This document shows, piece after piece, positions 23,028 through 64,000 of a DNA stretch of 64,000 bases. The first letter of the stretch is position 1. Each line of letters opens with the position of its first letter. The stretch covers positions 45,818,001 to 45,882,000 of the forward strand of contig NC_135758.1 of NCBI RefSeq assembly GCF_052425735.1, given 5' to 3'. The notes under the pieces are model-generated. The model was not told the origin of the DNA. It did no database searches and was given only the letters and a program-made list of their open reading frames with translations. The DNA is from Oculina patagonica (taxonomy: Eukaryota). The translations under genes and the position numbers were made by a program.

Positions 23028-24069
23028 GATCAGATTCTATACCTGTAGAATCACCAGAAACTCGATGGAAAACAAACAGTAAATTTAATGTGCTCGTCCG
23101 TTACAGAGCCATTTGAGTTTGATCGTAGCACGAGTCAAGTTAGAGCCCGAGTCAACTTCGAGTCACGAGTCAAGTTAAATTTCTTTTTTTTTTTTGCAGT
23201 TTTATTTTTAATTGCTGTGTAAAAATTATATACGTACCGGAGGTATAAGAACAGCAAGATTTAGTCATTTGACCTTTTCTTTCAGTTTCACTGTCGATTG
23301 CGACAGTTTAGTCCTGCATTTGTTCGCAGCTGCTTTTCAAACGTTCCTCGGCATTCATAATAGATTTTCCTCACAGATTCCTACCTGTATTAATTACACA
23401 CAGCGAGGCAGAGGTTCCATTTCAACAAGAAAGCGTGAAAATTGACGTGAAGTTCAAAAATATTAGCCCTTCTTGACTCGAGCGCCATCTTGTTTATCCA
23501 TAGGGATCCCATACAAGAAATGAAAGGGTGACCCTATTTGGTGGAATGGAGGAATGACGGAACGGCACGGCGGAATGGCGGAATACCCTAAAACGTGGAA
23601 TGACGGAAAATCCTAAAACGCGGAATGACGGAATATCCTAAAACGCGGAATTGTGAAACATTAAAAAAAGAAGCAACAACAGCAAAAAAAACAAACAAAC
23701 AAAAGGAAAATTATACATGCTTATTTTCTCAGACGACGATTAAGGCTAAGAATGATTCAGGTACTTTAACTTGTGGATATTCGTCGCTGTGACAGAAAAG
23801 CCAACTTGTTTACAGCGGCTGCTAGCAGTAGAAAACCAGAAAACAGTAAATATAACCCATAGACGAAGGGTTCTTTATATATCTTCTTAATCCTTCGAAG
23901 AATACTCGAGTGATCGAGGGAGGATTTCGTTATTTTACAGAGTTCTTGTCCCGCTCGAGACAATGAACGTATCAAGCCGAAGTACGCTAACGAAGCCGTT
24001 AGAGAGAAAACGAAAGGGCCTGAAATTAACTGAGTTTGTACTGAGAAATTAAAAAAAAAAAGGAAATCC

Positions 24070-24170
24070 ACAACAAGGGGTTTCCAGATGGTCACCCATC
24101 CAAGTACTAACCCCGCCCAACAGGGCTTAACTTTGGCGATCGGATGAGAACCGTTGTTTTCCATGTGGTA
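24070..24170 (-). pseudogene. 5S rRNA-derived sequence (diverged)
   Basis: Minus strand reads ataccac...ggttctcatccgatcgccaaagttaagc...ggttagtacttggatgggtgacc, matching the 5S A-box and C-box regions. Confidence 0.85.
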
Positions 24171-24302
24171 TCAGAAAGAGCGCGTAAATCAGCTTATAAC
24201 AGTGTAAATCCACTTAGATCATCGTTCAAAAGATCCATTATAACCAGGTGTTTCTGTTCTTTATTTCCATGACTCTTGTAAGTCTTTGCTTCGTCTGGGA
24301 CT

Positions 24303-24349
24303 GATACCACAAGGAAAGCACTGGTTCTCGTCTGATCGCCAAAGTTAAC
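24303..24349 (+). pseudogene. 5S rRNA 5'-half fragment
   Basis: gataccacaaggaaagcactggttctcgtctgatcgccaaagttaa. Confidence 0.7.
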
Positions 24350-46046: not shown

Positions 46047-46460
46047 CTACTTTTGTAGTCGTCGATCCATGGCAGGTTGGTCTTCATCATTGAACAGAAG
46101 TTTCCTTTGGGCAGTGATGAGCATCGGGCAGCGATTAATGAAAGATTTTGGTGTTTGATATTTCACATCACAAGCGGTGTAGCCTCCCTTCGTCAAAATC
46201 TTCCAGTCGTCAAGGTCCATGGTTGAAGTACAGGCCTCGTTGATGAAGATGATTTCAGTAGATGTTGAGATCATTGCCTTGTTAAATACTCTTTGCTTGG
46301 TAACAGTGGCGATGTTGCTGTGATGAACTAGGCCTAGGATTGGCTGGAAGAGACTTGTTTTGCTGCTGTTGGCATCGCCAATAAGGCAAGGCACTCTGTT
46401 CTTGTTGAAGTTCAGAAGTCGCAGAAAGTCTTCGTAGAACTCGCCAATTTTGACTTCAGT
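46047..46460 (-). pseudogene. Superfamily-3 helicase fragment (small DNA virus or D5-like replicative ATPase)
   Basis: Walker A CLIGDANSSKTS, Walker B IIFINE, motif C PMLITAQ, Arg-finger AMDRRL. Confidence 0.7.
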
Positions 46461-46822
46461 CAGGCTGTTCCTCCTGGGCCTCTGCATCATCCTCAGTATC
46501 AGAATGACCAAGACCAGAGAACTCAGCCTGGTAAGCCTCTCTACGCGGGCAATGATTGGCTTGGTGCTCAGTATTACGACAGAAACGACAAGCCTTAGTG
46601 CAGTCCCTGGCAAAGTGGCCCGGCTCATGTCACAATAAACACCTGCCTTTATCGGGGCTTCCCACGGACGTACGCCCCCCTTTACTTTTACTTTTAAGCA
46701 GTCGGGGCATGTAACTTTTGATTCTTATTTATCCGATGAGCAAGGGCTCAGGAAAGTCATCTGCCAATTGAAGCTATCTGAATGAGAAGAATGGCCATTC
46801 CCGCTCTGCAATTTCTTGTTGT

Positions 46823-47245
46823 TTATGCTAAGTCTCCCTTTTGTTGTTTACGTTCTTTCTCCTTGCGCTCTTGTTCTCTGTGGTCTTTCTCCTTTTCTTT
46901 TGTCGCTTGGGCTCTCTTCTCCTCCACTACGACTTTAGCTGCCGATGCATACAAGATATTTTCACTCGGAGCTGGAACAACTTTGGCGCAAAAAAAGAGC
47001 AATAGCACATGGCATGCAATGCGTCATGACAAATCTTGTAGACTTCAGCTTCTTCGCAATCTTCGATCCTATGGCTGGGTTGTTCACAATTGAAACATCT
47101 GATAGAGTTACATGAGTTACCCATGTGTCCGCTATTGCCATATTTGCTGCATGTACGCGGCTGGGAGGGATAACTGATATAGACTAACTCCCCAAGAACA
47201 TAATGCTTTTGTGAAACCCATTCTTGCTGTATGTATACCATTGCG
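46823..47245 (-). pseudogene. Tx1 ORF1 zinc-knuckle fragment
   Basis: GIRNGIHTARM; YPSQPRTCSKYGNSGHMGNSC..IRCFNCEQPSH...CKICHDALH. Confidence 0.8.
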
Positions 47246-47896
47246 AATTCCTCTCGATAGCACAGGAAAAAACCTTAAATTCCAAAATTGGGTAAATGTT
47301 GGTAAATTCTTGGCAAATGGCATAATTCCCAAGAAGATCCCAAACTTGGTAAAATCGAGCATTCCCAATTTCAGTTCATCTTTGGAATTCGAATTTATTA
47401 AAGTTTTCCCAAGACGATGAGTTATTCTTTACCAAGAAAATACCAAACTCAAAGGCCAAATCCCAAGGTCCAAAAGTTGGATGTATGTTTGTAATATATT
47501 GGTAAATAATATAATTCCCCAAAAGATTCCAAACTTGGTAATATCAAGTCTTTCCAAGTTCATTTCTTCATTTAAATTTAAATTTACCAAAGTTTTCCCA
47601 AGATGGTGGTTTATTTTTTACCAACAAATACCCAAGGTCTCTAAGTTGGGAAAAACGTGAAGAAAAAAGGACAGCAACACCGGCAGATTTTCCGACACCG
47701 AAAGACCAAAAACATTGCCCATTTCAAAGAGGTTCAAAACGATCAGCTTGCTTTTTGCAAGAAACGTGAGTTTCCTGTAGCAGAAAAATGTCAAAATTCA
47801 AATTATCGAGTTCTTGAATAATCTGAGAAAGCTTACTAGAGGAACCAATCCCTCTTATGTTAGTAGAGATAATTTTGAGCCTTGTAGTCATTTTAA

Positions 47897-49393
47897 TTAA
47901 TGGTCATATCTACGTTTACGTCTCGTTGCCACTTGCCAACCATAGTCGTCATCTTTGTGGTAATCGCGGCAGGATGAGCGATATTTGCGTTCGTCGCGCC
48001 GATAGTGGTCAGATCTTCTTTGGCGTTCCAACCACTCTTCTTCCTCTCGTTGTTTCCTTGCCTTCCATTCATCGAATTCTTCCCTATCCTTTCGCTCGCG
48101 GCGTTCTCGGCTTGATGTTCTGCTTCTGTCCTTTCGCTCGCGGCGTTCACGGCTTGATGATCTACTTATGCGTTCAGGAGTCTTCTTTTTTTGATCTTCG
48201 CGCTTGTCTTCTTCCATGGGCTCATCTCGTTTCAGGCGGTCTTCAGTGGATTTACGGGTTGTTTTGTTGGCGGGCGGGCGCTGTTGGACATTTTTCTGCT
48301 GGGCGACATGTGGAGGTTTTGCCTCTTGTTGTTTGGCCTTTTCGGCTTGCTTGCGTTGCTGTCGATCCGCTTTAGCCTTCTCTGTCTCCTTGGCGTCGCG
48401 CAGGATCTTTTTCGCAATCGAGGATTTGACGTTAGCGCTGTACACCAGAAAAGGGCATACATTTAAAACATGATCTGGCGATTTGCAGAGAGGACATAGC
48501 TGTATTTCTGTGCAGTCACGCGAAAGGTGGCCTGGTTGTTTGCAATTAAAACACCGGACCGAATCGCATTCCTTCGCCATGTGGTCTTTGGATCCACAGT
48601 TTCGGCAGGTCTTCAGTTGCGACGGGTACCAAATTCTTAGAAATTCGCCGACCAAATTGATGGTGGAGGGAATGTGTCACAAAATGTGGATTCTGGCTGT
48701 CCTTACACCGTTCTCAATACATTCGACAATGAGGCCGCGACGGAAACTTAACACACGACAGTTATATGACAATCAGCCAATTACCGCCGTGTCTGGCAAC
48801 TCAGAAGGCGCTTCGTAAATCTTAACAAGGACTAGGCGGTTTTCACAGTCACCCAGAAAAACCAAAGTGCCGTTTATTTCGATGCACACGGTTTCCAGGG
48901 CGTCTTCCTTTGTTGTAGCAGAGTCGAAAGTTACGACCCACCAGCGGTGGGCGAAATTTCATCAATGTCAATCCCTGCCTTGTCGAAGGCTTCTAAAATT
49001 TCCTTGCTGGTGCAGACAAAGTCAACGTTGAAATAAACTGAGCAGCATTTTGACAATTTCGTATCATAATTCCAGTAACACGAGGACGCTTTTTTGAAAC
49101 AGACTCCATTGTTGTTAAGAGACGACAAATCATCTGGCAGTGCCCCAGGAGAATCAAAAGCCTCATCACACAATTCGTCCCACAGGGTCGCAGCACTTGG
49201 CTGGGTTGTTGGATCAACACTGCTGGGTGCTGTCATTCTCGACGACTAACACGGTTTCACCAGGAGTTGTAAATTGGCTAATATGCTGACTATCTTCACT
49301 ATTCTTATCCATATTTGAAAAAACACACTGTCAATAAAAATTGATTGAACGCGAAACAACTTTAAGAGCTTAGCCTAAAGGCCGAGAAGCGAT
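47897..49393 (-). mobile_element. Keno-like Tx1 element 5' part: U2 head plus frameshifted ORF1 (three CCHC knuckles)
   Basis: U2 nt 1-25 at 49369-49393; LVKIYEAPSELPDTAVIG; CRNCGSKDH, CFNCKQPGH, CPLCKSPDH; charged tail. Confidence 0.85.
49369..49393 (-). pseudogene. U2: U2 snRNA 5' fragment (nt 1-25, 1 mismatch)
   Basis: ATCGCTTCTCGGCCTTTAGGCTAAG. Confidence 0.9.
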
Positions 49394-49556
49394 ACTGAAC
49401 ATACCCCTACCTAGGAGGGTGGTTGAGGGTTTCCTCCTTCCATATATGGTGCACAGTATATTGTCGCTTACAAAAAGGATCTGTCGTCAGGAAAAAGTGC
49501 CACAGGTCGACTACTATAGCTGTTAACAGGCAGTGTTTCTAGTGTGCCTGAAGTTA

Positions 49557-50215
49557 GTATGTAAGTAAGTAAGTAACGTCTTTATTTATAGAGGGTACCA
49601 CTTAATAGCTAAAAAGCTAACAAACTCGTGGCCCTCCTATTTACAAGTATTAAAAAAAATCTAAGATACACATTAAAAACCTACGATATACAATAATATA
49701 TAAGAAACGAATTACCAATTAAAACCTACTTATTAAAAACTAATTATATAATTAAAAAAAATTGCATTCGAAATAAAGTCTTACATTAAAAAATGGTCAA
49801 TAAAATGTTGTTTCCTTAAAATTGAACTGCAAAAACTATTTCTAAAACTGTTAAGTGAAGGTTTTTTTTCTTAGCTCAAGTGGCAGGCTGTTCCATGCTT
49901 GGCATGTTTGTACTGCAAAAGTTCTTCCACCTTCAGTTTGTCTCTTAAAAGAAGGGCAAAGTAAGTTGAAGTTCAAATATCTTGTATGTCTACCATGCAA
50001 ACTACTATTTAACTTTAGACTCTCTTGAAGATATGAAGGCAAGAAACCTTGAACCCTTTTATATGCAATTACATCTTGTCACTTTTGCATCATCATAAAA
50101 CAGAAGCGATTTGAGACGGCTAAACAGTGGAACGGAAGGGGCCGTTCTGTCGGCGTTTAGAATAACTCGCGCAGCTCTCTTTTGTAGCTTAAGTACCCTG
50201 CTAAGATTGTCCTGA
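49557..50215 (-). mobile_element. L2/CR1 LINE 3' end with (TTAC)n tail
   Basis: KLQKRAARVIL...PLFSRL...PSYL...GRTFAV...WNSLPLELR; gtaa repeats at 49560-49578. Confidence 0.85.
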
Positions 50216-50229
50216 AATGAGTTTGCACA

Positions 50230-51190
50230 GCCATAGTGATAATAATAAGGGAAATCATGTTCATAGTAAATGTTTGTGTCAGGCATCAGAATTAAAGATT
50301 TTGTAGCCAGTCTGGATACGTTGAAGTTCAATCAGAAGTTGAGCATAGGCGTCCGGTTGAGGTTTGTCCTTTATAGCCTCCCAGTTGGAGCGTACTTGGT
50401 CATTCGTTTTGTGTTTTCTGGCCAACGGTTGGTGATCGGGCTGCAGTTTTGATGTAAATACAGAGCACGGCACTTGTAAAAAGTGCCGCCTGGGACTGCT
50501 TTTACAAACAGGGTTCGCTCCAGGCCTGTAGACTAAAGAGCCTTCATGAAAAGCGCAAGGCCCGCAGGATTGACAGGATTTGCACTCGCGGGTGTACTAG
50601 GGCCGTGCTGGTGGTATAAATAAAGGGCACAGCACTTGTTAAAAGTGCCGGCAGGGACGGATTTTATAAACAAGGTTTGCTCTGGGCTTGTAGATGTAAG
50701 AGCCTTTATGAAAGGCTTGAGGCCCGCAGGATCAACTGGTTTTTCACTCGCGGGTGCATTAGTAGATTCCGCGTGAGTAGCTGGAGGTTCGTCGATGGAC
50801 CATTTCTTGCTGAAGTTTTCATTTCATTCATTGTGTAGGAAAGGGGTGGTTGTGATTGTGATTGCAGGTCAGGGGGGGGGGAATTTTCTTGGGCGTCCAT
50901 ATCAGTTTGCTCGGTATCGTCGGTTGCAGGCGGACTTCGGTCCCTACCCTGGACGGGAGATTGACGTCGCACAGGGCAGTTTTTAACCACGTGTTCAAGT
51001 GAATGACAGCTGTGGCATGTCACGGGTTGACCAGAATATTTGAAGCCAACGTCTAATCCTCCAAGTGACACGCGCTTGGGAATATTGGATATCTATTCGC
51101 AGAAATTCATTGACACGCACACCGTTTTCGATATGTTCGTAGCCTTTCTCAGAGAAGCGAAGGCGGTAAACACGGCAAGATTTATGTTCC
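50230..51190 (-). pseudogene. Tx1 ORF1 fragments, partly duplicating 40020-40470
   Basis: HIENGVRV; YSGQPVTCHSCHSLEHVVKNCP; repeated 'cctgcgggcct...cccagagc' blocks. Confidence 0.75.
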
Positions 51191-51229
51191 CTATAAGTGG
51201 AAAGTAAAGTTCCTCGTCGGGGTATTACA

Positions 51230-51722
51230 CTACATACATACATACAACATACATGGGGGCTTTTCGAAGATAATATACTACTAAAATCAATAATATTACA
51301 TTCTATTAAAATTAAAATTAAAATTTAGATAATCTAATTATAATAACAATAATAATCTAATTTAGATAATCACAAATTTAAAAATTCTTCAATTAATTTA
51401 CGTTTCAATGCCTTTTTAAAAATTAAAATAGATCTACTGAGTTTTAAAGTAAGGTCCAATGAGTTCCAGATGGCAGTTGTCCTTTAACAAAATGTTCTTT
51501 GGCTAGTAGCAGTTCTGAATAGAGGAATGTTTAATTGTTGAGAGCTCCTAGTGGTACGCGTGCTTATGTCTGCAAGTTTGATAAAAATAGAGGTCAAATA
51601 GTCACGAGCACATCCTGTCATGCACTTGAAGGCTAAAGTGGCCTTTCGATAGTAAAGCTGGCTTGATACTGGTAGCCATTCTAATTCTTTTAGTATGGGC
51701 GTGACGTGATCAAATTTCCGTC
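51230..51722 (-). mobile_element. L2/CR1 LINE 3' end with (TATG)n tail
   Basis: RKFDHVTPILKELEWLPV...AFKCMTG...TRSSQQLNIP...WNSL. Confidence 0.85.
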
Positions 51723-53475
51723 AGCTACGTTGATATCAAAAAATTTCCCGCCGTGGATTGGAACAATTCCTTTAATTACCTCTCTGTAATCAGGCAGAGA
51801 CTGGGCTATTTTCAGTGCATCTATTTCACCTAAGTCTTCATCGACGGTAAGCGGAACCGTTCGCGGTGCGCCACGCGGCCTGCTCAACACCATCGTTGCG
51901 TGACAAGGTTGTTAGGCATTTCTGTGTTAAATCTGCCACACGAACTGTAATCACGTGGATATTGATTGACTGCTTACCATAAAAGCGTTGTACAGAGACT
52001 AAACCATTGCTAAAAAATACACCTAGAAGTCTCCTCTTATTTATCCATTTGAGGCCAAAAGGAGTGGCAACATTTGATCGCCACCTACCAAGCCACACCT
52101 CTGACTTAACAGAATTTAACTTTGCCCCAGACCCCTTTTCATACTTATTTACAAAAGCTAACAAATTACAAAGAGATTTCTCATTTTTAACAAAATTAGT
52201 AGCATCGTCAGCATATTGCGAGATTTTGAAATAAAGCCCACCGGCTCCAGGGAGCCGGAAGCCTTCGATTTCCTTACAATTTCTAATTTGAGTTGAGAGG
52301 ACCTCTGAAACTAAAACATACAAAAGAGGGGAGAGCGGAAAGCCCTGCCTAACCCCTCTACCCAGAAAAAATGCTCCAAAAGCTTACCATTACAAATAAT
52401 CCGTGAAAAAAACATTATTATAAAAAAGACTGACCCAGCCACAGAAATTTGGGCCGAATCCGAACTTGGTTAAGGTACACATAAGAAAATCATGATCTAC
52501 ACGATTGAAAGCTTTTTCCTGGTCCAACGAGACAAGGATACCAGCTTCATTAGTTTTATCGATCATGTCTAAAACATCATGAACTAAATAAAGATTAGAG
52601 AAAATTTATCTACCCACTACCCCGCAAGTCTGATCAGAATGAACAATAGAGGACATAACAAGTGTTAAACGCTCAGTAATCACCTTATAATCAGTGTTCA
52701 GTAAATAAATCGGGCGCCAATTTTTGGGCATATCGTGATAAAACTTAACAAGTATAGATTCTATTTCTGATTGAGAAAATTTTTCGCTCCCGTCAACATC
52801 AAGGAAAGAAGAGAAAGAGTTCCCAATAGCATGCTTATTTTCTAAACGAAAAAAATAACAAGTAGGTTTTTCACCCTCTTCAAACCATTGCGCGCAAGAA
52901 CAAATAGTTGCGCCCTCCGCCTCTTGACGAACAAGAGACGAAAGAGCGCTTTCTAAAAACTTAATTTAATTCCTAATTTACTTGGCACTTGACCATCGTA
53001 ACGTAAAAAAATTAGGATTTTGCCAAAGCGTAAGAAGCTAGGAATCGGTTTAAGGACGCGAACCCGAAAATGCCGCAATCCATTGCACACATGCAATTGC
53101 GGGCATAAAGTCAAATTTACCCCGGCGATGGTGCAACATGTCACAGAACGGGCTTAGTCGTTTGATGATAGCAACATCTTAAAGCTCAAAGGGCGCATCA
53201 TAAATAGTTAGATAAGTTAATGGACGATCAATGTCCTGAATTGCGTAGTTTTCACTGTTTATGCAAATCGAGTTCAAGCATACAAATTTCTCTTTCGCTT
53301 CCGCCGTTTTGAAAGTAATGACACATTCCCCATTCATTTTGCGTTGTAGACAATTAATTTCTGAGGCACTAATTGCGGCATTGTTAAGAGCCGCAAACAC
53401 AGACCTAGCCGAGGTGCTTCGCAAAGGTGTGAACAGCGCTGAACAGCACTGTGGACGCTTTGGAATATTATCCAT
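51723..53475 (-). pseudogene. Abutted Tx1 pieces: ORF1 N-terminus (51723-51893), internally deleted RT (~51990-52950), another ORF1 N-terminus (53179-53475)
   Basis: SQYADD, GVRQG.PLSPLLY, DQEKAFNRVDH, WRPIYLLNTDYK, EGEKPT.YFF; LTYLTIYDAPFEL. Confidence 0.8.
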
Positions 53476-53926
53476 ATTATCCTATTGATCAAAGTCATTC
53501 TTCTCAAGCAGCTGCTTGAAGTGCTGCTTGATTTCTTCTTCACTGAAGACTGCTAACTGCTCGTGATCATTAGGCCAGTGCCTTACTTCCAGTATACATG
53601 CTGCACTGAGGACAGGGTTCCTGCTCAAAGTTGTCAAACCGGTCACCCAAATTCTGATTAGTCACATGACTACCCTGTTCTTCAGATTGGTCAGCTCTGC
53701 ATCATCATGCACACACTTGTTCAAAGTGACGGTTTCAAACACATTGCCATTGACAGACTGCTCAAACTGCCTCAAATTTGCACCTGGTTTTGCAAGCAGG
53801 CAGTGAGTGATAGCCTGGTGCGTTCTTGGGCATTCTTGACATTGATAACAGCAATTTCATCCTTTTGAAATGTTAAGCTCAGTTTCTGGAGTTCATCCAG
53901 AAGGTGAGCCTAAGGTGTAGCCTTAA

Positions 53927-56288
53927 CCCTTTCCCTACTAACCACGCCCAAAGATAGATGTCTCTAATTTCCTAGGCTTCTGATGAACAACATAAGCGAA
54001 ATGGGCTTAAAATCAAAACATGCATGCTCAGTAGATTTGTAGAATTAGATAGGGGCTATAAAAGAAAGGAAAATGCAGTCCAGTTGTGTTTAATCAATAT
54101 TCTGTACAAATATAGTTGCAATTACATTCTGTGTAGGTGTAATTCACAGCTAAATGTTTGACTCAATAAAACTTTTGAATTTGCCGCCATTACAACAAAC
54201 TTATATCATTGGTTCAGGTAAGTTGTATATACTTCTCATAGTCACAACAGCAACAAAAATGAATAAAAATATTTACAAAATGACTGGTGTCTTATATTTA
54301 ATCAGAAAAACCTAGAATTTTCGCAAAGAATGTTTTTTTATGCGGAGTGAAAGCGAAGGAAACAAGGATCCTTGCACAAAGCTACGCCACATTGGGCACA
54401 CTCAAAGATGGTCTCCTTCGCTCGATCGCTTGAAGTTTTTCGCCCGTCTTTCTTGCATTGCACACAGTGCCTTTTCCTTGCTTTTCCCTCCCTTCGAGTA
54501 ATGAAATGCCCTGTAGCATTCTCTGGAGTAGTAGTGGCTTCTAAAGACGCGGCTTTCATCGTGCGCTTTCTGTTCTCCGCTCGACTCGAAAACCCAGCAA
54601 TGAGCTGCTTTGCGAGTGCAAAACGAAAGTTGACTAGGGTCCTCCTTCCCCTCCTCTGGACATTTTCTTTAAAGATAATAAAAGAATTGACAAGAGAGAG
54701 ATCAAAAATAAACCAGAACAGGTACTTGTACCACTTTTTTGAGGGTCGACAGGCGCTGTAGTATGATCGAAGTTGATCAGAGCGATCAACACCACCCATG
54801 CTGTTGTTGTACAAATCAACACACGCCGGTTTCTCAACACGCACAACATCGCCGTTTTTTTTTCTTCTCTCCTTCACAGTTTTAGGCGCAAGGGGATCAA
54901 AATTTGTTGTCAAGATATTTACATCGCGTTTATCGTGCCATTTTGTATAGACAAGATTCCCCTTTTGCTCGCAGATTGTTTCTCCTTCTCTCTTTAGCTT
55001 TCGACGCGAAGATGGCGGCAACCCGATACGACCTGCACGAACTGTTGAGCAGGCGTAAGTTCCTTCATTCTGAAGATCTTCTAACAATTTGGGGGAAGAA
55101 AAATAATTATCAAAATACACATGGTGATTTTTGTTTAAAAATGGGGTCATCAATTCCATAACCACGCTGTAGCCTAAGCCGTTTGCAAGAACACGACCTG
55201 GCTGTTTACCGAGGTAAACTTCATGATTGATGACAAAACCGTTTGAAGCATCGGCTGCCATCCACACTTTTATGCCGTATTTTGTTGGCTTCGCTGGCAT
55301 GTACTGGCGAAAAGAAAGCCTTCCTTTGAAACCTATCATTCCCTCATCTACGGAAATATGCTTTCCAGGTTTGTAGAGCTCTTGTATTTTAGTATTGAAG
55401 TGGGAAAGAATTGGCCGCACTTTGTAAAGGCGATCGTAGCCATCTTCTCCTCGCCTAGGTTCCATCGACGAGTCGTTGAAATGAAAAAAGCGGCTGATAT
55501 TTTCAAAGCGATTTTTTGTCATCACTTTTTGTATTCCCTCATTGCCCAGAAATGGATCACTTGACCAGTAGTCAGCAGTAGAAGGAAGATGATTTACACC
55601 CATCACAATACACACACCAAGAAATGCCTTTATTTCATTTAGTGTCACATCTTGCCATTTATCAAGTGCTTCGCCTTCAAGTTTTTGCCGAGCATAGCGG
55701 TTTGTTTCCGTCACAATAACATCGAGAATTTCATCATTAAAAAACTTTTTAAACACATCTATCTCTCTAGCCTCATTTCCTATCTCAAATGTAATTCCAA
55801 CACGCGAAGTAAAATCGTTAACACGAATACTATGCAAACGATTTGACCACTCAACTGCTTCATCGTCTTCGCTCTTACTCTCGCCTCCACTCTCATCATT
55901 TTCATCGCTCTCATCCTCCACTTCACTAACATCAATATCTGAGTCTTCGTTATCCATTTCTTCGTCAGAATTGCCGAACAGTTCATCATGTTCCTCTCTT
56001 GAAATCTCTAATGGTTGAAAAGCACGAGCCGCCATGTTGATAAATTGAACGCGAACGATCGATCGAAAATAATGCCATGTGCTTGCTTCACAGAGCGAAT
56101 AATTTATGCGCAGTTGCTGCGATTTGATTGGTCAGTGTTTGAGAAATAATTATAAAACAATAGAGAGCAAAGACAGCCACTCTATGGGTAGGGAGGGGAG
56201 TTTATTTTGCTATGGCGGTACAGGGCGGCATAGGAAAATGGCGGCGAATTTTTTAAGGGCGGTACAGGGCGGCATAGTAGGGAAAGGG
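53927..56288 (-). mobile_element. Full-length piggyBac transposon (2362 bp)
   Basis: TTAA TSDs (53923-53926, 56289-56292); 14-bp TIR ccctttccctacta; subterminal direct repeat ggcggtacagggcggcatag x2; intact ORF. Confidence 0.96.
54338..56035 (-). CDS. piggyBac transposase (PGBD4-like), 565 aa, uninterrupted
   Basis: DDD triad contexts SVDEGM, YFDNYF and GGVDRSDQ; KPTKYGIK; C-terminal Cys-rich domain CxxC...CxxC...CxxPCF..FH. Confidence 0.95.
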   Translation of the reverse strand: MAARAFQPLEISREEHDELFGNSDEEMDNEDSDIDVSEVEDESDENDESGGESKSEDDEAVEWSNRLHSIRVNDFTSRVGITFEIGNEAREIDVFKKFFNDEILDVIVTETNRYARQKLEGEALDKWQDVTLNEIKAFLGVCIVMGVNHLPSTADYWSSDPFLGNEGIQKVMTKNRFENISRFFHFNDSSMEPRRGEDGYDRLYKVRPILSHFNTKIQELYKPGKHISVDEGMIGFKGRLSFRQYMPAKPTKYGIKVWMAADASNGFVINHEVYLGKQPGRVLANGLGYSVVMELMTPFLNKNHHVYFDNYFSSPKLLEDLQNEGTYACSTVRAGRIGLPPSSRRKLKREGETICEQKGNLVYTKWHDKRDVNILTTNFDPLAPKTVKERRKKNGDVVRVEKPACVDLYNNSMGGVDRSDQLRSYYSACRPSKKWYKYLFWFIFDLSLVNSFIIFKENVQRRGRRTLVNFRFALAKQLIAGFSSRAENRKRTMKAASLEATTTPENATGHFITRREGKARKRHCVQCKKDGRKTSSDRAKETIFECAQCGVALCKDPCFLRFHSA

Positions 56289-56537
56289 TTAAGAACTAAA
56301 ACGAAACATGTTTGTAGCTCTCCTGCTTTGATATCACATTTTGTGCTCTTCCCTTCGTGGTTGCACTGCTGGTGTCAGCCACAGCTGTTTGATATATGTG
56401 TGCATGGATGACTTTGTACTTGTTACAGACAACTTTAATAAAACGTATCAATTCTAGTTCTAATTATCGAGTTATCACGGGTGTTTTTGCCAGTCCAGGT
56501 GAATTGGCGGAGAGTTTTGTTTCTATTTCTCCAAACA

Positions 56538-57164
56538 TCAGATAAGTTGTTCTGAATCAGTACTGGGAGAGTAAATGTTAATTAAATTGATTGTGTGGTC
56601 ATCGAGAGATAATGTTATTTTTAATGTTCGGCCAAGAGCGTCACGCGAAATTTGTTGAGGGTGACAGCATAGGCGTTGATGGATAAGTATTGCCACACCA
56701 CAGGAGTTGTCTGTGTCGTTGTTAAAAAATATTTCGCCGTCCCATTCATTTTCAATCATGTTGTGTAAATCAGGAGTCCAATGTGTTTCTTGAAGGAGAA
56801 TTTAATCATATTTGATCCGATTAATAAAATTAAAGGCTGTTTGGATTACTGCATCCTCTGTTACGTAGGCTTTGAGGCCTATCACGCTGACGTTGATATA
56901 ATAACCTCTCGGTGGTCTGCATTCTACGTGTATTTTGCGGAAATCCAGTCCACTGTCTATGAAGGCTTCGGCTTGCGATTGAGAGCCAAGCTCGACAAGG
57001 TATTGACCTCTTCCCAGGTCTTGTGTAACATTGATTTCAGCAGATTTGTCTTCTTTCTCAATACAGCTTTTAACATCAACTAGCGTCGCCGTAACTGGCA
57101 GTTTGAAGGTGATCGTTTTCGCCTTCCGGTAGGCCATATTTGCTTCTCAGTTGGCTAAGACAAG
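56538..57164 (-). pseudogene. Tx1 ORF1 N-terminus (56802-57137) fused to an AP-endonuclease fragment (~56538-56800)
   Basis: MAYRKAKTITFKLP...INVSVIGL; LQETH, GVAILI, GRTL, INIYSP. Confidence 0.75.
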
Positions 57165-57929
57165 AATTACCAAATAGCTTCACGTTGGAGCTATAAGCAA
57201 TGGAAATATTCCTTTAAAAGAAAAACTGATACACTTTCACAATGGAATCGTGAAAGATTTGCTCTGGAATGCCTAAAGGAAGGCGAGATTATAAGGATTA
57301 GCCATGTGTCCGCTATCGCCACATTTGCGGCACGTAAGCGGCTGGGAGGGATAACTGATATAGACTAACTCCCCAAGAACCCTAATGGACAAGGGAATTG
57401 CTTTCGCGAGATGCATTCTTGCTGTACGTATACCATTGCAAATTCCACTCAATACCACAGGAAAAAAAACCTAAAATCCCAAAATTGGGTGAATGTTGGT
57501 AACTTCTTGGCAAAAGGCATAATTTTTAAGAAGATCCCAAACTTGGTAAAATCGAGCATTCCCAATATCAGTTCATCTTGGGAATTTGAATTCACCAAAG
57601 TTTTGCCAAGATGATGGGTCATTCTTTACCAAGAAAACACCTAACTCAAAGGCCAAATCCCAAGGTCCAAAAGTTGGAATGAATGTTGGTAACTTCTTGG
57701 TAAATAGTATAATTCCCAAGAAGATCCCAAACTTGGTAGAATCGAGCATTCACAAATTAGTTTTTCTTGGTAATTTAAATTTACCAAAGTTTTCCCAGGA
57801 TGGTGTTTTTTTCAAACGACAAATAGGTTCTTAATGTTGGGTATACATTGGTAATTTATTGGTAAATAATATTATTCCCCAAAAGATTCCAAGCTTGGCA
57901 ATATCAAGCCTTTCCATGTTCATTTCTTT

Positions 57930-58420
57930 CACGTCGATCTCGACTTCTTTCACGTTGCCCTTCGATGGTCACGGCGATCTAATTCCTCCCTGTGCTTCTT
58001 CTCACGGCGTTCTTTCTCCTCCAAATTCTTCTTCTCTTCAGCCTTTTTCTTCTCCTCATCAGCCTTCTTCTTATCATCCGATCTACCTGGGGTGCGGTTT
58101 TGCTGGATCGGCCGCTGGGCGGGTTGTCTAGGCTGTTTTGGTTGCTCCTTAGCTGCTTCGGCAAAAGGCGCCACACCAGAAATGTCCTTGGCTTCTACAT
58201 TTGCACCAAGCCAACTCCGGCTGATCGATTTGTGCCTGGAGACCACAAGGCGTGACCGCCCCATTGTTTTCCCCAGAACTCACCTTGTGTGACATCCGAC
58301 AGATGTGTCTCTTGTAGGAGATAAATGTCGAAATGTTTAGACAATAAATAATTAAAGAATTTCTCCCGTTTGGGATGTTCGGCGATGCCATTCGCGTTAA
58401 TTGTACAAATAAACACCGCC
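57930..58420 (-). pseudogene. Tx1 APE N-terminus fused to an ORF1 C-terminal fragment
   Basis: ICTINANGI...YLLQETH...WSPGTNRSAGVG joined to ANVEAKDISGV.PFAE. Confidence 0.8.
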
Positions 58421-58499
58421 ATAATTAGGATCAAAAGGAGAGTGGTCATCTTGAATGTTATATAATCAGTGTTGTAAAATAAACAAAGGTTCTTTACGT

Positions 58500-59803
58500 T
58501 TTTTTTCGCGACGCTCCATCTCTTCCAAAATCATCTTCTCCTCTTCAGCTTTCTTTCTATCATCTGATCTGCCTGGGGGGCGATTTTGTTGGGCTGGTTG
58601 CTGGGGGGCTGTCTTGGTTGTTTTGGCCGTTCCCTAGCAACTTCAGCAAAAGGCACCACACCAGAGATGTCCTTAGCTTCCACATTTGCGCTAAACAAAA
58701 TAAACGGGCAACGCGATGTTGCGTGATCTTCGTTGATACAAACGTTACACAAAGGTTCTAAAGAACATTCATCAGCGTGATGGCCAGAGGCGTCACAGTT
58801 AAAACAACGCGGCAATTATTGCGATATGATCATTGCCGCCGCAACGGCGACAACTTTTTGGCTGGGAGTCATAATAAAACATGATTAATTCACCACAAAT
58901 CCGCATCGATGCGGGAATCGGGTGCGCCACACGCATTCTCGCTGTGCAAACTCCGTTTTCCAAATCTACGCCAAGGCGATATCGGCGAAAAGACAAAATT
59001 TTTCCGTACTGGGAAAGCCTGCCAATCAAAACAGTATCCGGCATTTCGGGCGGCGCTTCATAGATTTTAACGATAACAGTTTGATGCTCGGCGTCCCCCA
59101 GAAAAACTTCGCACCCACTAATGGTGACACTGTTCAGTTCAAGCGCGAAAGCTTTGTTTTCTGGGGTGTCGAATGACACAACCCAAGTTCTATTTGAATT
59201 TTTTCGTTGAACGTGGTCGATATCGATTCCTGCAGCATCAAAACCGAACAAAATGTCCTGGCTCGTACATACAGTGTCTACAGAAAACTTGACCGAATAG
59301 CCTTTAAACAATTTGGCGCTCTCATCGTCATTGAACTTCCAATTATTCGGCGTCCGCTTAAAGCGAACGCCAACGTTCTCGGGCTGGGATAGGGCGCTCG
59401 GTACTTCGACAACTAAATCGCCACCGCTCGCTTCCAGTAACGGCGGCGGGGCTGCACCATTCTCATTCATATCATCATCTTGTTGAGCCGTTTCGGCCCA
59501 ACTTTCACTACGCTCATTCTCAGCAGTATTCTCAAAGAGTTGCGCCGTTCCGGTCTCGTCGATTGGTGTATTGACCTGTTGGCCGCATGGCAAACTCGGT
59601 TTATTCTCCTCAGTTACACGCAAAACTGTCTGAACTGACTCCGGGTTGCTCGGCTGGTTGGGTGCACTCGACGGTTTCTGAGATTTGTCAGATTTCTTAC
59701 CAGTTGTCTTCTTACTATTATTAGCCATTATAAACACAAAGCAAAACGTTGAAAAACGTTGACCGCAGACCTCTTGATCTTAGCCAAAAGGCCGAGAAGC
59801 GAT
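58500..59803 (-). mobile_element. Keno-like Tx1 element 5' part: U2 head plus near-complete ORF1 (one frameshift at ~58810)
   Basis: U2 nt 1-31 at 59773-59803; VKIYEAPPEMPDTVLIGRL; CRRCGGNDH, CFNCDASGH, CNVCINEDH. Confidence 0.88.
59773..59803 (-). pseudogene. U2: U2 snRNA 5' fragment (nt 1-31, exact)
   Basis: ATCGCTTCTCGGCCTTTTGGCTAAGATCAAG. Confidence 0.95.
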
Positions 59804-59816
59804 ACCGAACATACCC

Positions 59817-61450
59817 CTACCTAGGAGGGTGGTCGAGGAAAGTCGCCCAGCCAGAAGGGGAAGAGGCAAAACGCTTCACCCACTGAGCCTGGAGCGACCA
59901 AGTTTTAAACTTAACATCTACAACAGAAAAACCACCAAAAAGTGAGGGCTGAGAAACAACAGAGCGAGATACAAGGTCGCGTTTCCCGCTCCAAAAGAAC
60001 TTAAAGGCCAGAGAAGTGAGCTCACTTTGGACCCAAGCTGGCATGTGGACAAGAGAAGCCACATACCAGATACGGGACAAGGCCAGAGCGTTGATGACAA
60101 GAGCCTTGCCACAAAAAGACAAAGAAGGAGAACGCCACGATGCAAGAACATGGTCAACTGCATCAATACGAGGACGCCAATTAGCCTCATCGAGGTTGCC
60201 AACCCCAATAAAAACACCAAGCACTTTGATCTTAGAAGACGTCCAATCAAGGGCGACAGGAGGATTGGAGCGACCACTCCAACCCCCAAGCCAGAGACCC
60301 TTGGACTTAGATTGGTTTAACTTGGATCCAGAGGCCTTCTCAAAAAGAGCATAGGTCTCAAAAGACGCAACTATGGAATCGTCAGAGGACAAGATCAAGG
60401 ATGAGTCATCAGCGTACTGAGAGATGGGCGACAGGGGATCAGAGCCGGGTAGACGGAGACCAGAGATACGGGGGTTACAACGGATATTAACAGCCAAGAC
60501 TTCGGACACAAGCACATACAAGAGAGGAGACAAAGGACAGCCTTGACGGACACCACGGGACAAGTCAAAGAAGGACGAAAGATAACCATTAACATTGACA
60601 GCACTCTGGACACAGTTGTAGAAGAGGTCTACCCAAGATACAAAAGAAGGACCAAAGCCCATCGCCAGTAACGTTGAACGCATGAAAGACCAGTCAACTC
60701 TATCAAAAGCTCTCTCTTGATCAAGAGAAAGGATAGCCACAGGGACGCCAGAAGATGTTGCATACTCAGCAACGTCTTGTAGGAGGGCAACGTTTTCACC
60801 GATAAACCGACCAGGCACACCGCAAGTTTGGTCTTTGACAACAACTAAATGGATGACTTTAAGAAGCCGCCCGGCGATCGCACGGGCGGCAAGCTTGTAG
60901 TCTACATTCAAGAGAGATATTGGACGCCAGTTCCGAGGATCAAGACGATCGCCTTTCTTATAAGATAATGAAATGACTCCTCTATGCTGAGAGAGAGATA
61001 AGCAGCCAGAGTCAAGGCAAGAATTAAGCACAGCAACAAGGTCAGACCCGAGAACATTCCAGAATTTAAGGTAAAACTCCATGGGAAAGCCATCAAGGCC
61101 TGGGGCCTTACATCTAGCCATCCCCTGAAGAGCCACAAAAACTTCCTCAATAGACAAATGACCTTCACAAGACAACGCCTCATCCTGCGAGAGTACAGAA
61201 GAGAGGTTGCCGAGCATGTCAGACTGGACAGACTGATCAGTCCCAGCAGCCGTGAACAATGAGATGTTAAAGTGCGAGAAAGATCGACACAGCTCATCAG
61301 GAGAGGAGACGATGGTGCCATCATCATTACGTACAGCAGAAATCCACCGATCGGCAGATCGCTTCTTCTCAAGACGAAAGAAATACGAGGAGGAAACCTC
61401 ACCCTCCTCCACCCAGCGAGCACGTGAGCGGACCTGTGCGCCCCTAGCAT
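59817..61450 (-). pseudogene. Tx1/L1-clade ORF2 internal fragment with a complete RT domain (531-aa open frame, truncated at both ends)
   Basis: KAPGLDG, WRPISLLNVDYK, LDQERAFDRV, GVRQGCPLSPLLY, SQYADD. Confidence 0.93.
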
Positions 61451-61959
61451 ATTGAGCATATTGAATAGCATAAGAATATTGAGCATTGACTGATGGGACA
61501 GTGAAATCCCAGACTTTTGGAATCTGTAATTAATTATTTATAACTAATTATTTTAAAAATACCATTACAGAAAGGAATGACAAATTAAAAAGCACTAATT
61601 TTATCTGTTTATTTGATTAATTTGAAAATAATTTCTTGTTGTTAAATGATTCCCACCAGCGATCATCAACAAACAGATGACCATTACTTTTTTCCTGAAA
61701 ATTATAAACATCAGCTGTTTTTAATTTAAACACCATATGCATGGGCAAAACAGTTACATCATACTTATAATTTTGGATGATGTCAGCAGCCTTTGCCCTA
61801 AGATCATCCTTGCAAGCTACTCCTTAGGCAAAAACATAAGTTTCTTTAAGAAAGTGCAATCACTTAAGTTATAATAATAACAATAATAATCATAATTATA
61901 ATAATAATACGCACACCTTTGTCTCAGCTTGACCATTTACAAATAATTTGCTAACAGCA

Positions 61960-62357
61960 CAGTATTGATACGCTGATCAAGATTCAGCAGCATGGCATAG
62001 ATTGTTCCAATTGGTGGAATTCGCATTGTTCCACTTCTCTGGGATGGCTGTTATCACATCTAGAAGAGCTGGGCACCTCTCTTTGGCTTCTGTAAGTATT
62101 TAGTCCCAGCAAAAGTCTCTCATTGTTTCAAAAGACTTGTTTCGTAATACAGATGGCAGATAGCCCCGTGTGTATTTGGCTACATTTTCGCATTCATTGA
62201 TAATTTCTTCTAAATGCAAACGCTTTAGATAGTTCCTTGCCTCCGAAATGAGCCATACTGATAAAGCAATGACTGAAGGCAGCCTTGAGCAAACTGCCAC
62301 ACTAAGTGATCTGACATTAATAGTTTCAACTGGTTTGAAGCTGTTTTCCTTTTTCAA
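61960..62357 (-). pseudogene. Fragment of an unidentified DNA-transposon-like protein
   Basis: PSVLRNKSFETMRDFCW...EAKERCP.LLDVI pattern; family uncertain. Confidence 0.3.
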
Positions 62358-63069
62358 CTGAAAATAAAAAAAACACGGTCCTGTTGGTCATAGTATTAAT
62401 ATGCGGACCGCTGAGGAAATAGCATAAACATACGAATCTTCAATTTTACGTCCTGTTTTATGACAATAATATAAGCATGTAGATTTGTCCCCCCCCCCAA
62501 AAAAAAAAAACAGTACAACTACTTCTCTAATAAAAAAAAAGGTACTTCAGCACTGCTTAATGAGTGAGTTAACATAAGTTGTTAAAAAGCGTATAGGGAA
62601 TTACTCACGTGAGGGAAATTACGTATGCAGTCACAAACCACATGCCACTAAAAAATGCATTTACTCATACTGGTTTATTTACGACCTTACAGTCAGTTTT
62701 AAAACTTAAAAACAGTAAAAGACTCGACCAAAATTGTTATGACTTATTTTCTGCTTTGCTGATTTTCCAGATATTCATCCTGTTTTTATATGCACTTTCA
62801 CGATGAATCGCGTCCTTATTAAAGAAATGAAAACCAGCGAACTTACCAACGGGTTGTTATAACCTGAGTTGGAAATTATTTCTAAGGCTGTTCTTCCGTC
62901 TGTTTGCAAATCCACTTCCTTTGTACTAACTTCTGAAGTTGGTACGGTGGTACTGCGGTTTCAGGGTTGCCAGCTGACAATTTTGAACAATGGTCTTGTC
63001 AGTTTCCGCTGTAGTTGAAAGCCTGTTTTTGTCATTCGCACTTGAGGTAAACTTTGAATCTTCTCTGTC

Positions 63070-64000
63070 GCTGAATAAACGCGAGACACGAAAGGTTACC
63101 GAAAAATGTCTCGTGCTTGGAATGTTTATTTGGCGTATAGAGATTTATTAACTGAAAGTTTTTACCGTTCAGCGCCAAATTGGCCACTACAACTCGGCCG
63201 TCCGAGTCGATATTATGGCCGGTGACCTGAATTGCGCTCCCAGGATGGAGTAGCAAGCCCACTCCGGCCGATCTATTTGTGCCTGGAGACCACAAAGCAT
63301 GACCTCCCCATTGTTTTCCCCAGAGCTCACCTTGTGTGACATCCGGCAGATGTGTCTCCTGGAGGAGATAAATGTCGAAATGTTTAGATAATAAATAATT
63401 AAAAAATTTCTCGCGTTTGGGATGTTCGGCGATGCCATTCGCATTAATTGTACAAATAGACACCGCCATAATCAGTATTAAAAGGGGAGTGGTTATCTTG
63501 AATGTTATAGAATCAGTATTGTAAAATAATTAAAGGTTCACGCAGGTTTAAAAAAATCGCACTTGGCTTTGAGCTCTTGATAGAGCGTCAGAAGCTCCAA
63601 AAAGGCGTCCTGTTCAACAATGCCAGCAAGGGTTTTTCAGACTTCTACTTCGTTGTCGGAGGCCTGGCCTTTTTTGCCCGCCGTCTTTGAGTAATTCCCA
63701 TGCTTGTGCTGGAGGTGCAGGGCACGACAGCGGTAAAAGGTGGTGGGTGGAATTTTTTTCATTAGCGCGCTTCGTTCCCAACCAGTGTTGGCCATGGCAC
63801 TCATGAAGTGTTTCAGGCGTGATCGATAGGATGGTCCGGTTCATCTGTTGATTTCTCAGCTGAGGCCGCAGAAGGTGGGGGAGTATTTTCGTCTGCAGCG
63901 GCAGAAAGACCCGGGGGCTGGCGTACCGAGATGGTGTTGGGCTCGGCGATGCGTCGGGCATGGAAATGACAGCTTTTTTGGCCAGTTCAGCCTCGTCACC
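63070..64000 (-). pseudogene. Tx1 ORF1 C-terminus, inter-ORF spacer and APE N-terminus (runs off the window)
   Basis: MAVSICTINANGI...LQETH...SAGVG...DSDGRVV...INLY.P; spacer nearly identical to 58420-58500. Confidence 0.85.

What the first reader, a model, noticed from the sequence alone, without database searches (positions are those of the whole stretch)
49369..59838. Two different Tx1 families both capped by the U2 snRNA 5' end plus the same ~35-nt upstream flank
Seen: U2 nt 1-25 (49369-49393) and U2 nt 1-31 (59773-59803) lie just upstream of two homologous but clearly diverged ORF1s. Both are preceded by the same 35 nt (49394-49428 vs 59804-59838, 2 mismatches; minus strand cctc(a/g)accaccctcctaggtaggggtatgttc(a/g)gt). 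In the second copy this flank is fused directly into an unrelated RT frame. Known: Keno (Tx1 clade) inserts site-specifically into U2 genes. Inference: the fragments were copied from U2 loci carrying Keno insertions, including sequence upstream of U2 +1, so they came from DNA or read-through RNA rather than from mature element mRNA. A plus-strand transcript would contain piRNA-length anti-U2/Keno junction sequence.
Basis: partly seen in the sequence, partly recalled or inferred. Interest (0 to 1): 0.8.

Follow-up and report, generated by a model that had tools for sequence, protein, structure and literature searches.

The report
U2-gene leader on dead coral LINEs
Two dead copies of jumping genes that normally insert into the coral's U2 splicing-RNA genes still carry the first 25-31 bases of U2 plus the genuine U2 promoter-side sequence. 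This is a known kind of element in a new host, but the way the pieces are stacked hints at how they are copied.

Summary
On the minus strand, U2 nt 1-25 (49393..49369) and nt 1-31 (59803..59773) lie just upstream of two ORF1s that are about 46-48% identical. Both are preceded by the same 35 nt, with 2 mismatches, both at CpG sites.

The genome is the stony coral Oculina patagonica. In other, unnamed coral-type assemblies the same flank (32/35 identical) sits directly upstream of intact U2 genes in 2,084-bp U2-U1-5S tandem arrays. There, ORF1/ORF2 relatives of both window copies sit inside U2: the 5' junction falls at nt 22-33, and poly(A) is followed by U2 nt 39, the published Keno site. The flank is therefore host U2 promoter-proximal DNA, not an element-encoded leader. 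It extends to -80 in copy 1.

The "unrelated RT" upstream of copy 2 is a truncated Keno-like ORF2 of the same family.

The window copies are broken and lack 3' ends, U2 tails, U1 and 5S. They belong to a minus-strand block of LINE pieces, most of which keep their 5' ends and all of which have lost their 3' ends.

I favour reverse-transcriptase-mediated stacking of RNAs that carry a short U2-promoter leader. Deletion inside an occupied U2 array is not excluded.

An earlier scan note (s1-306434) covers the same stretch.

The parts
59839..63539 (-). Piece R: a Keno-like Tx1 ORF2 fragment truncated at both ends. ORF2 ATG is at 63469, the EN domain runs to about 63092, and the RT region is 61454..59889. 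It ends at about aa 871-880 of 1157, directly against the U2 flank.
   Evidence: tblastn with a U2-resident ORF2; Pfam RVT_1 E=8e-27; 69/73 aa and 91.6% nt identity to the ORF2 start at 58492..58204; the same junction in L001.
59804..59838 (-). Copy 2: U2 gene upstream flank, -35 to -1.
   Evidence: 32/35 identical to the flank of intact U2 genes in L008-L013.
59773..59803 (-). Copy 2: U2 snRNA nt 1-31 (the head).
58493..59772 (-). Copy 2: 44-nt 5' UTR (59772..59729) and ORF1 (ATG at 59728), frameshifted near 58800. It has CCHC knuckles.
   Evidence: 57% identical to the ORF1 of the U2-resident element L002a.
58204..58492 (-). Inter-ORF segment plus ORF2 aa 1-73 (ATG at 58422). It is cut at 58204 and joined to an ORF1 C-terminal scrap of a related family.
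49394..49473 (-). Copy 1: U2 gene upstream flank, -80 to -1. It includes a conserved block that I take to be PSE-like.
49369..49393 (-). Copy 1: U2 snRNA nt 1-25, with 1 mismatch.
47897..49368 (-). Copy 1: 5' UTR and ORF1 (ATG at 49312), broken by frameshifts and stops. It has CCHC knuckles.
   Evidence: its best relative is the U2-resident element L003b, at 58-60% identity.
47650..47891 (-). Copy 1: ORF2 aa 1 to about 80, then cut.
57298..57928 (-). Tandem repeats of about 190 bp plus an ORF1 fragment of another LINE, downstream of copy 2. A homologous block downstream of copy 1 lies at 47117-47640.
   Evidence: 84% identical over 531 nt.

Best explanation
Shown: these are the 5' ends of two dead copies of different Keno-like LINE families (U2-gene-specific, Tx1-type). 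Each is still attached to host U2 gene sequence: U2 nt 1-25 or 1-31, plus 80 or 35 nt of the U2 promoter-proximal flank. Inferred: they did not reach this non-U2 block by random decay of a U2 array. Reverse transcription brought them in as RNA-derived copies whose 5' leader began a short way upstream of U2 +1. In Oculina the leader begins at about -35 in two independent junctions, at -70 in another, and at -80 or further in copy 1. Each new cDNA was joined to a 3'-truncated older LINE piece in the same orientation. This could happen by repeated target-primed insertion at one site with loss of the upstream neighbour's 3' part, or by template jumping. The result is a strand-biased stack made largely of 5'-anchored LINE pieces, all of them cut at the 3' end. 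The copies are now non-coding relics with CpG decay, frameshifts and truncated ORF2. Any present role, for example as an antisense small-RNA source, is untested.
For: Flank identity: intact U2 genes (192 bits) in 2,084-bp U2-U1-5S repeats carry the flank immediately upstream of +1. The flank differs between assemblies that appear to be from different species while the elements stay related, so it tracks the host locus. Family: relatives of both ORF1s sit in U2 with poly(A) followed by U2 nt 39, which is the Keno site according to PMC4640811. RNA-mediated origin: (1) No U2 tail, U1 or 5S lies next to any of the five truncated-flank heads in Oculina sequences. (2) Flank lengths are short: 35, 33-37, 70 and at least 80 in Oculina, and 177 and 227 in the other assemblies, out of roughly 2,050 nt of non-element unit. 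(3) Two independent junctions, with different partners on both sides, end within 2 nt of each other at about -35. (4) Every identified upstream partner is a 3'-truncated LINE piece on the same strand. (5) No Tx1 ORF2 residue beyond aa 871 was found anywhere in the window, and no minus-strand poly(A) in 40-64 kb, although C-termini of divergent families are detectable elsewhere. (6) The R-type segment starts at the same nucleotide twice, with different upstream neighbours. (7) L020 shows the same stack in place inside a U2 unit: head1, two 3'-truncated elements, 177-nt flank plus head2, a full element, then U2 tail, U1 and 5S.
Against: No Oculina U2 array could be fetched, so the unit size and the true extent of copy 1's flank in this genome are unknown. 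The U2 promoter should start transcription at +1, and no evidence here shows a start at -35, -70 or -80. No target-site duplication, poly(A) or terminal U2 tail is visible for the window stack, so no insertion event is directly documented. Some pieces in the block are also 5'-truncated. Break-prone DNA at an active promoter could also concentrate breakpoints near +1. Window and L001 share one junction, so that counts as one event, and the number of independent junctions is small (about six).
Confidence: 0.55

Rival explanations
1. DNA-level relic. The block is what remains of a U2-U1-5S array whose units were occupied by Keno-like elements. Later deletions joined the middle of one element to the promoter region of the next unit. 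Under this reading the flank and head never moved.
For: R and the ORF2 start next to copy 2 belong to the same family (69/73 aa), as expected for neighbouring occupied units such as those in L002. One deletion of about 3 kb would explain the R|flank junction. A possible CCTC microhomology lies at the junction. The junction was later duplicated as DNA (window versus L001), which shows that DNA-level rearrangement occurs here.
Against: Right-hand breakpoints all lie within 230 nt of +1, and within 70 nt for three Oculina junctions, out of about 2,050 nt of tail, U1, 5S and spacer. Roughly, (230/2050)^5 is about 2e-5 if breakpoints were uniform. No tail, U1 or 5S scrap accompanies any head. Two independent junctions coincide at about -35. 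No ORF2 C-terminus or poly(A) survives.
Confidence: 0.28
2. Homology-primed copying. The element RNA starts at U2 +1. At a site without a U2 head, the cDNA end (complementary to the U2 head) anneals to another U2 gene. It is extended for a few tens of nt along the U2 promoter DNA before end joining.
For: This needs no unusual transcription start. It predicts short, variable flanks (33 to 227 nt). Homology between the cDNA and upstream target is a recognised aid to 5' joining of site-specific LINEs (cited in PMC4494074).
Against: It does not predict two junctions ending within 2 nt of each other. Nothing here supports it directly.
Confidence: 0.1
3. Element-encoded leader. The 35 nt plus the U2-like head are part of the elements themselves and only resemble U2.
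For: The leader recurs in front of at least four ORF1 families.
Against: The same sequence continues upstream to 5S and precedes intact U2 genes with no element present. It changes with the host assembly, not with the element family. Flank length varies between copies.
Confidence: 0.03
4. Assembly artefact: repeats joined wrongly.
For: The region is repeat-rich.
Against: The R|flank|head|ORF1 order recurs at a second locus of a public O. patagonica assembly at 95-98% identity (L001). A Logan contig also confirms head-to-ORF1 continuity (L018).
Confidence: 0.02

Closest known systems
Keno (U2 snRNA gene-specific Tx1-clade LINEs; Kojima & Fujiwara 2004, as cited in PMC4494074 and PMC4640811; reported in fish, frogs, lancelet and Hydra)
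   Same: APE-type endonuclease plus RT plus zf-RVT in ORF2, a CCHC ORF1 and a poly(A) tail. The 3' flank starts at U2 nt 39 and the 5' flank is the U2 5' end with a variable junction.
   Different: The host is a stony coral. Several diverged families coexist. The window copies lie outside any U2 gene, lack 3' ends and carry promoter DNA upstream of +1. Placement in an RT tree with Repbase Keno was not done.
Tx1-Mar and SINEU elements with U1/U2 heads and 5' extensions in crocodilians (Kojima 2015, PMC4494074)
   Same: Tx1-type elements and their passengers begin with a U2 or U1 5' fragment. Some copies carry extra 5' sequence taken from the DNA flanking the source copy.
   Different: In crocodilians the heads are ascribed to template switching onto snRNA, and the elements target a Mariner transposon. 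Here the head is the 5' half of the target gene and comes with non-transcribed promoter DNA.
R2/R1 rDNA-specific LINEs (co-transcription with the target; variable 5' junctions; own knowledge and as cited in PMC4494074 and PMC4640811)
   Same: Site-specific insertion into a tandem multicopy RNA gene. The RNA can include upstream target sequence, the 3' junction is precise and the 5' junction varies.
   Different: R2 uses a restriction-like endonuclease and a ribozyme to trim the co-transcript. Rfam found no ribozyme at the two window sites.
L1/SVA 5' transduction (own knowledge; SVA-MAST2 cited in PMC4494074)
   Same: Source-locus DNA upstream of the element is carried into new copies because transcription starts upstream.
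   Different: Here the carried piece is an snRNA promoter-proximal segment, and the copies sit in a stack of truncated pieces rather than at dispersed sites with target-site duplications.
Uni-strand piRNA clusters such as Drosophila flamenco (own knowledge)
   Same: A block of about 24 kb of TE fragments lies almost entirely on one strand.
   Different: No small-RNA data are available. The 5'-end bias of the fragments is not a known cluster property.

Membership tests
Keno (U2-specific Tx1-type LINE) | 5' flank is the 5' part of a U2 snRNA gene | tested here: met
   U2 nt 1-25 and 1-31 lie directly upstream of the 5' UTRs.
Keno (U2-specific Tx1-type LINE) | 3' flank is U2 from nt 39 after a poly(A) tail | tested here: inconclusive
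   Met for relatives in L002, L003 and L020, where poly(A) is followed by TCTGTTC.... It cannot be seen for the window copies because their 3' ends are missing.
Keno (U2-specific Tx1-type LINE) | ORF2 with an APE-type endonuclease and RT; ORF1 with CCHC knuckles | tested here: met
   Relatives carry Exo_endo_phos + RVT_1 + zf-RVT. In the window, piece R has RVT_1 and an EN N-terminus, and both ORF1s have zf-CCHC.
Keno (U2-specific Tx1-type LINE) | RT groups with Keno inside the Tx1 clade in a phylogeny | not tested
   No Repbase or Tx1 reference sequence was available. Database hits carried no clade names.
Genuine U2 gene upstream flank | The same sequence directly precedes intact U2 genes | tested here: met
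   At least 15 intact U2 copies in L008-L013 and L016, plus L022, carry it, 32/35 identical to copy 2. These are from related assemblies, not from Oculina itself.
Genuine U2 gene upstream flank | Present upstream of intact U2 genes in this genome | not testable with these tools
   No whole-genome search of O. patagonica was available. The indirect routes failed.
piRNA cluster | Strand-biased array of TE fragments | tested here: met
   In 40-64 kb, long open frames total 3,761 aa on the minus strand and 881 aa on the plus strand. All Tx1 hits are on the minus strand.
piRNA cluster | Small RNAs of 24-31 nt mapping to the block with 1U/10A signatures | not testable with these tools

The most novel reading that the evidence does not exclude
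Keno-like LINE RNAs in corals start inside the U2 promoter (a discrete start near -35, others near -70 and at or beyond -80) rather than at U2 +1. Reverse transcriptase then builds long one-strand stacks of 5'-anchored, 3'-truncated LINE pieces, either by serial insertion at one nick with loss of the previous element's 3' part or by template jumping. On this reading the stacks form a new kind of TE-fragment cluster that contains sequence antisense-capable against the U2 5' end.
Probability: 0.25. Interest if true: 0.65.

Novelty: new member of a known kind. Interest (0 to 1): 0.4.

Why it matters
The finding places U2-specific Keno-type LINEs, in several diverged families, in stony corals, where they sit in the 5S-U1-U2 tandem arrays. 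It also settles what the shared 35 nt is: host U2 promoter-proximal DNA. The short and partly coincident flank end points, together with the stacks of 5' pieces, give a concrete and testable handle on two open points for site-specific LINEs. One is where their transcripts start when they sit in an snRNA gene. The other is how 5' ends are joined. If the block is a small-RNA source, it would contain sequence complementary to the essential 5' end of U2.

Tried and rejected
- **Oculina U2 array, first route.** I searched a 38-aa frame running through the flank against the representative protein library and got no useful hit.
- **Oculina U2 array, second route.** I searched a spurious spacer ORF and its Logan contigs. 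This returned only the other flank type.
- **Ribozyme at the U2/element junction.** Rfam shows only U2 at both sites.
- **Flank beyond -80 in copy 1.** No significant similarity to the other assemblies' spacer was found. The spacer may simply have diverged.
- **Nested-insertion model.** Rejected: no 3' remainders of Tx1 ORF2 occur anywhere in the 64 kb.
- **Prematurely polyadenylated transcripts.** Rejected: no A-tracts occur at piece ends.
- **Splice junctions.** Rejected: there is no AG/GT at the expected positions (read by eye).
- **Window 5S gene.** The 5S at 24062-24181 is not linked to the U2 pieces. It has an inverted partial copy nearby and may belong to the foldback transposon noted in s1-271015.
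- **Clade naming.** Database names and the Atlas search gave nothing.
- **Findings search by sequence.** Blank.
Full report
**Observation.** On the minus strand the window reads, for copy 2, flank (59838..59804), U2 nt 1-31 (59803..59773), a 44-nt 5' UTR, then the ORF1 ATG at 59728. For copy 1 it reads flank, U2 nt 1-25 with one mismatch (49393..49369), a 5' UTR, then the ORF1 ATG at 49312. Pattern searches find each motif exactly twice in 64 kb, against 0.00 expected in shuffles. Rfam's U2 model recognises both sites at sub-threshold scores, as a 25-31 nt fragment must. The two ORF1s are homologous at 46-48% identity. Both flank mismatches are G/A differences at CpG sites.

**Organism and relatives.** A protein search with copy 2's ORF1 returned a 95%-identical gene model from Oculina patagonica, plus many unnamed ENA and Logan proteins. 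An earlier scan note also describes this genome as a coral of the Oculina lineage. I fetched the DNA around several hits. L001 is a second O. patagonica locus. L018 is a Logan contig 97-98% identical to the window and L001. L002, L003 and L008-L017 come from ENA assemblies ERZ25067872 and ERZ26051807. L019 and L020 come from two further assemblies.

**What the flank is.** In L008-L013 a 2,084-bp unit repeats head to tail. It contains U2 (192 bits), U1 (156 bits) and an antisense 5S gene (117 bits), all above Rfam gathering scores. One such contig is labelled 1818x where other contigs of that assembly are labelled 34-40x, so there are probably hundreds of units. Immediately upstream of U2 +1 every unit carries the flank, 32/35 identical to copy 2, followed by an intact U2 gene. 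The similarity of copy 1 to these units runs to -80 (49473) and includes a conserved block that I take to be the proximal sequence element. Further upstream nothing aligns. L019 and L020 have different flanks in front of the same U2 start. The flank therefore follows the host locus, not the element. Linked 5S-U1-U2 repeats are already published for Acropora (PMC8167085).

**What the elements are.**
- In L002, L003, L014-L017 and L020, relatives of both window ORF1s sit inside U2 units. Copy 2 is 57% identical to L002a, and copy 1 is 58-60% identical to L003b.
- Upstream of each resident element lies the full flank and U2 nt 1-22 to 1-33. Downstream lies the rest of the unit.
- Where the 3' junction was read (L002a and its upstream neighbour, L003a), a poly(A) tail is followed by U2 from nt 39. 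The branch-point recognition bases are therefore lost.
- The Utopia paper states that U2 downstream of Utopia insertions starts at nt 39 and that Keno's 3' flank is identical (PMC4640811).
- ORF2 carries Exo_endo_phos, RVT_1 and zf-RVT, and ORF1 carries CCHC knuckles.
- These are therefore Keno-like elements by architecture and target site. An RT tree with reference Keno was not possible.
- Keno is already recorded from a cnidarian (Hydra), and Tx1 families with U1 or U2 heads are known from crocodilians (PMC4494074).

**The window copies are not in U2 genes.**
- No U2 tail, U1 or linked 5S occurs near them.
- Copy 2's flank stops at -35 and abuts piece R (63539..59839). R is a Tx1-type ORF2 fragment covering aa 1 to about 871 of 1157.
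- R's first 286 nt are 91.6% identical, and its first 73 residues 69/73 identical, to the ORF2 start that follows copy 2's ORF1. It is therefore not an unrelated RT.
- The same R|flank junction is present in L001, which rules out misassembly and shows later DNA-level duplication.
- Both window copies are dead: ORF1 is frameshifted and ORF2 is cut after about 73-80 residues.

**Pattern of junctions.** Heads with a shortened flank were found as follows.

| Junction | Flank end | Upstream partner |
|---|---|---|
| Window copy 2 and L001a (one event) | -35 | R, ORF2 |
| L018, second head | -33, or -37 with one mismatch | C-terminal end of a copy-2-type ORF1 |
| L001b | -70 | ORF1 zinc-knuckle fragment |
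| Window copy 1 | -80 or further | Not identified; a LINE ORF2 C-terminal scrap lies about 580 nt upstream |
| L020, second head | -177 | ORF2 cut at aa 113 |
| L003a | -227 | Unrelated, non-LINE sequence at the edge of an array |

- Where a partner was identified (all except copy 1 and L003a), it is a 3'-truncated LINE piece on the same strand.
- In the window no Tx1 ORF2 residue beyond aa 871 was found, and no minus-strand poly(A) in 40-64 kb. C-termini of divergent families are readily detected in other loci.
- The R-type segment begins at the same nucleotide twice, with different upstream neighbours.
- Long open frames in 40-64 kb lie mostly on the minus strand: 3,761 aa against 881 aa.
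- L020 shows the same arrangement in place. One U2 unit holds head1, two 3'-truncated elements, then a 177-nt flank plus head2, a full element, the U2 tail, U1 and 5S.

**Mechanism.** It is shown that the flank and head are host U2 gene DNA joined to the 5' ends of Keno-like elements. The rest is inferred.

Random deletions in an occupied array should leave tails, U1, 5S and long spacers as often as short flanks. Five breakpoints all within 230 nt, out of about 2,050 nt, would have a probability of roughly 2e-5. Two independent junctions also coincide at about -35. I therefore favour an RNA-templated route, in three steps:
1. Source copies in U2 genes give RNAs with a short promoter-derived leader.
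2. Their cDNAs are joined to older LINE pieces, which lose their 3' parts.
3. The joining happens either through repeated target-primed insertion at one nick with upstream deletion, or through template jumping.

A variant has the RNA starting at +1, with the flank copied from another U2 gene after the cDNA end anneals there. A DNA-level origin remains possible, with a break-prone promoter concentrating the breakpoints. I give it about 0.3.

I rejected three other readings. Nested insertion leaves no 3' remainders in the window. Premature polyadenylation leaves no A-tracts at piece ends. Splicing has no consensus dinucleotides at the junctions.

**Not done.** Transcript starts, copy depth and small RNAs are therefore untested, and the piRNA suggestion stays a speculation supported only by strand bias.

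**Verdict.** This is a correct and well-seen observation. The core interpretation is right. The elements are a new host record, with several families, of a known kind. The carried promoter flank and the 5'-anchored stacks are the parts worth following up.

Noticed in passing
L004:1-30, L006:1-30 (also L007:40-60); Logan contigs, not the window: A Tx1-type family whose ORF1 is 58% identical to copy 2 has no U2 head. Instead it starts with the 3' part of a type III hammerhead ribozyme core (CTGATGAG...CGAAAC). The Rfam Hammerhead_3 match is partial, cut off by the contig end, at E=0.14. This is either a ribozyme-bearing target repeat or a 5' processing ribozyme.
   Followed up: partly
L002:3968-6236, L016:3576-5488, L014:4490 onward: Poly(A) retroelements of about 2 kb, with an ORF1 but no ORF2, are inserted in U1 snRNA genes after nt 18. 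They have a 16-bp target duplication (ACTTACCTGACGCGGG), which is the 5' splice-site recognition region. A 2015 paper lists no U1-specific LINE.
   Followed up: partly
window 24062-24181 (-) and 24304-24348: A full 5S rRNA gene (71 bits) with a nearby inverted partial copy, not linked to U2 or U1. It may belong to the 5S-carrying foldback transposon noted elsewhere in this genome (s1-271015).
   Followed up: no
window 54338-56035 (-): An intact 565-aa ORF that I read, by eye only, as a piggyBac-type transposase. It lies inside the fragment block and is probably a later DNA-transposon insertion.
   Followed up: no
window 57298-57928 and 47117-47640 (-): The same monomer array of about 190 bp plus a short ORF1 fragment (84% identical) lies downstream of both U2-headed copies. 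The monomers look like a tandem-repeat 5' UTR of another LINE family. Both Keno-like ORF2s are cut within about 10 codons of each other (aa 73 and about aa 80).
   Followed up: partly
window 57138-57164 (-): The 5' UTR of another ORF1 contains a stretch whose reverse complement resembles U2 nt 1-26 with a gap (noted as s1-306455). This could be an inverted, decayed head or chance.
   Followed up: partly
U2 flank -21 to -6 (window 59809-59824): The flank contains GTAGGGGTATGTTC, which resembles the Keno target GTAGTATCTGTTC in U2 nt 33-45. It may be a pseudo-target or chance.
   Followed up: no
window 46047-46628 (-): A helicase-like scrap (weak DUF5906 match, E=0.0015) lies in the same orientation inside the block.
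   Followed up: no
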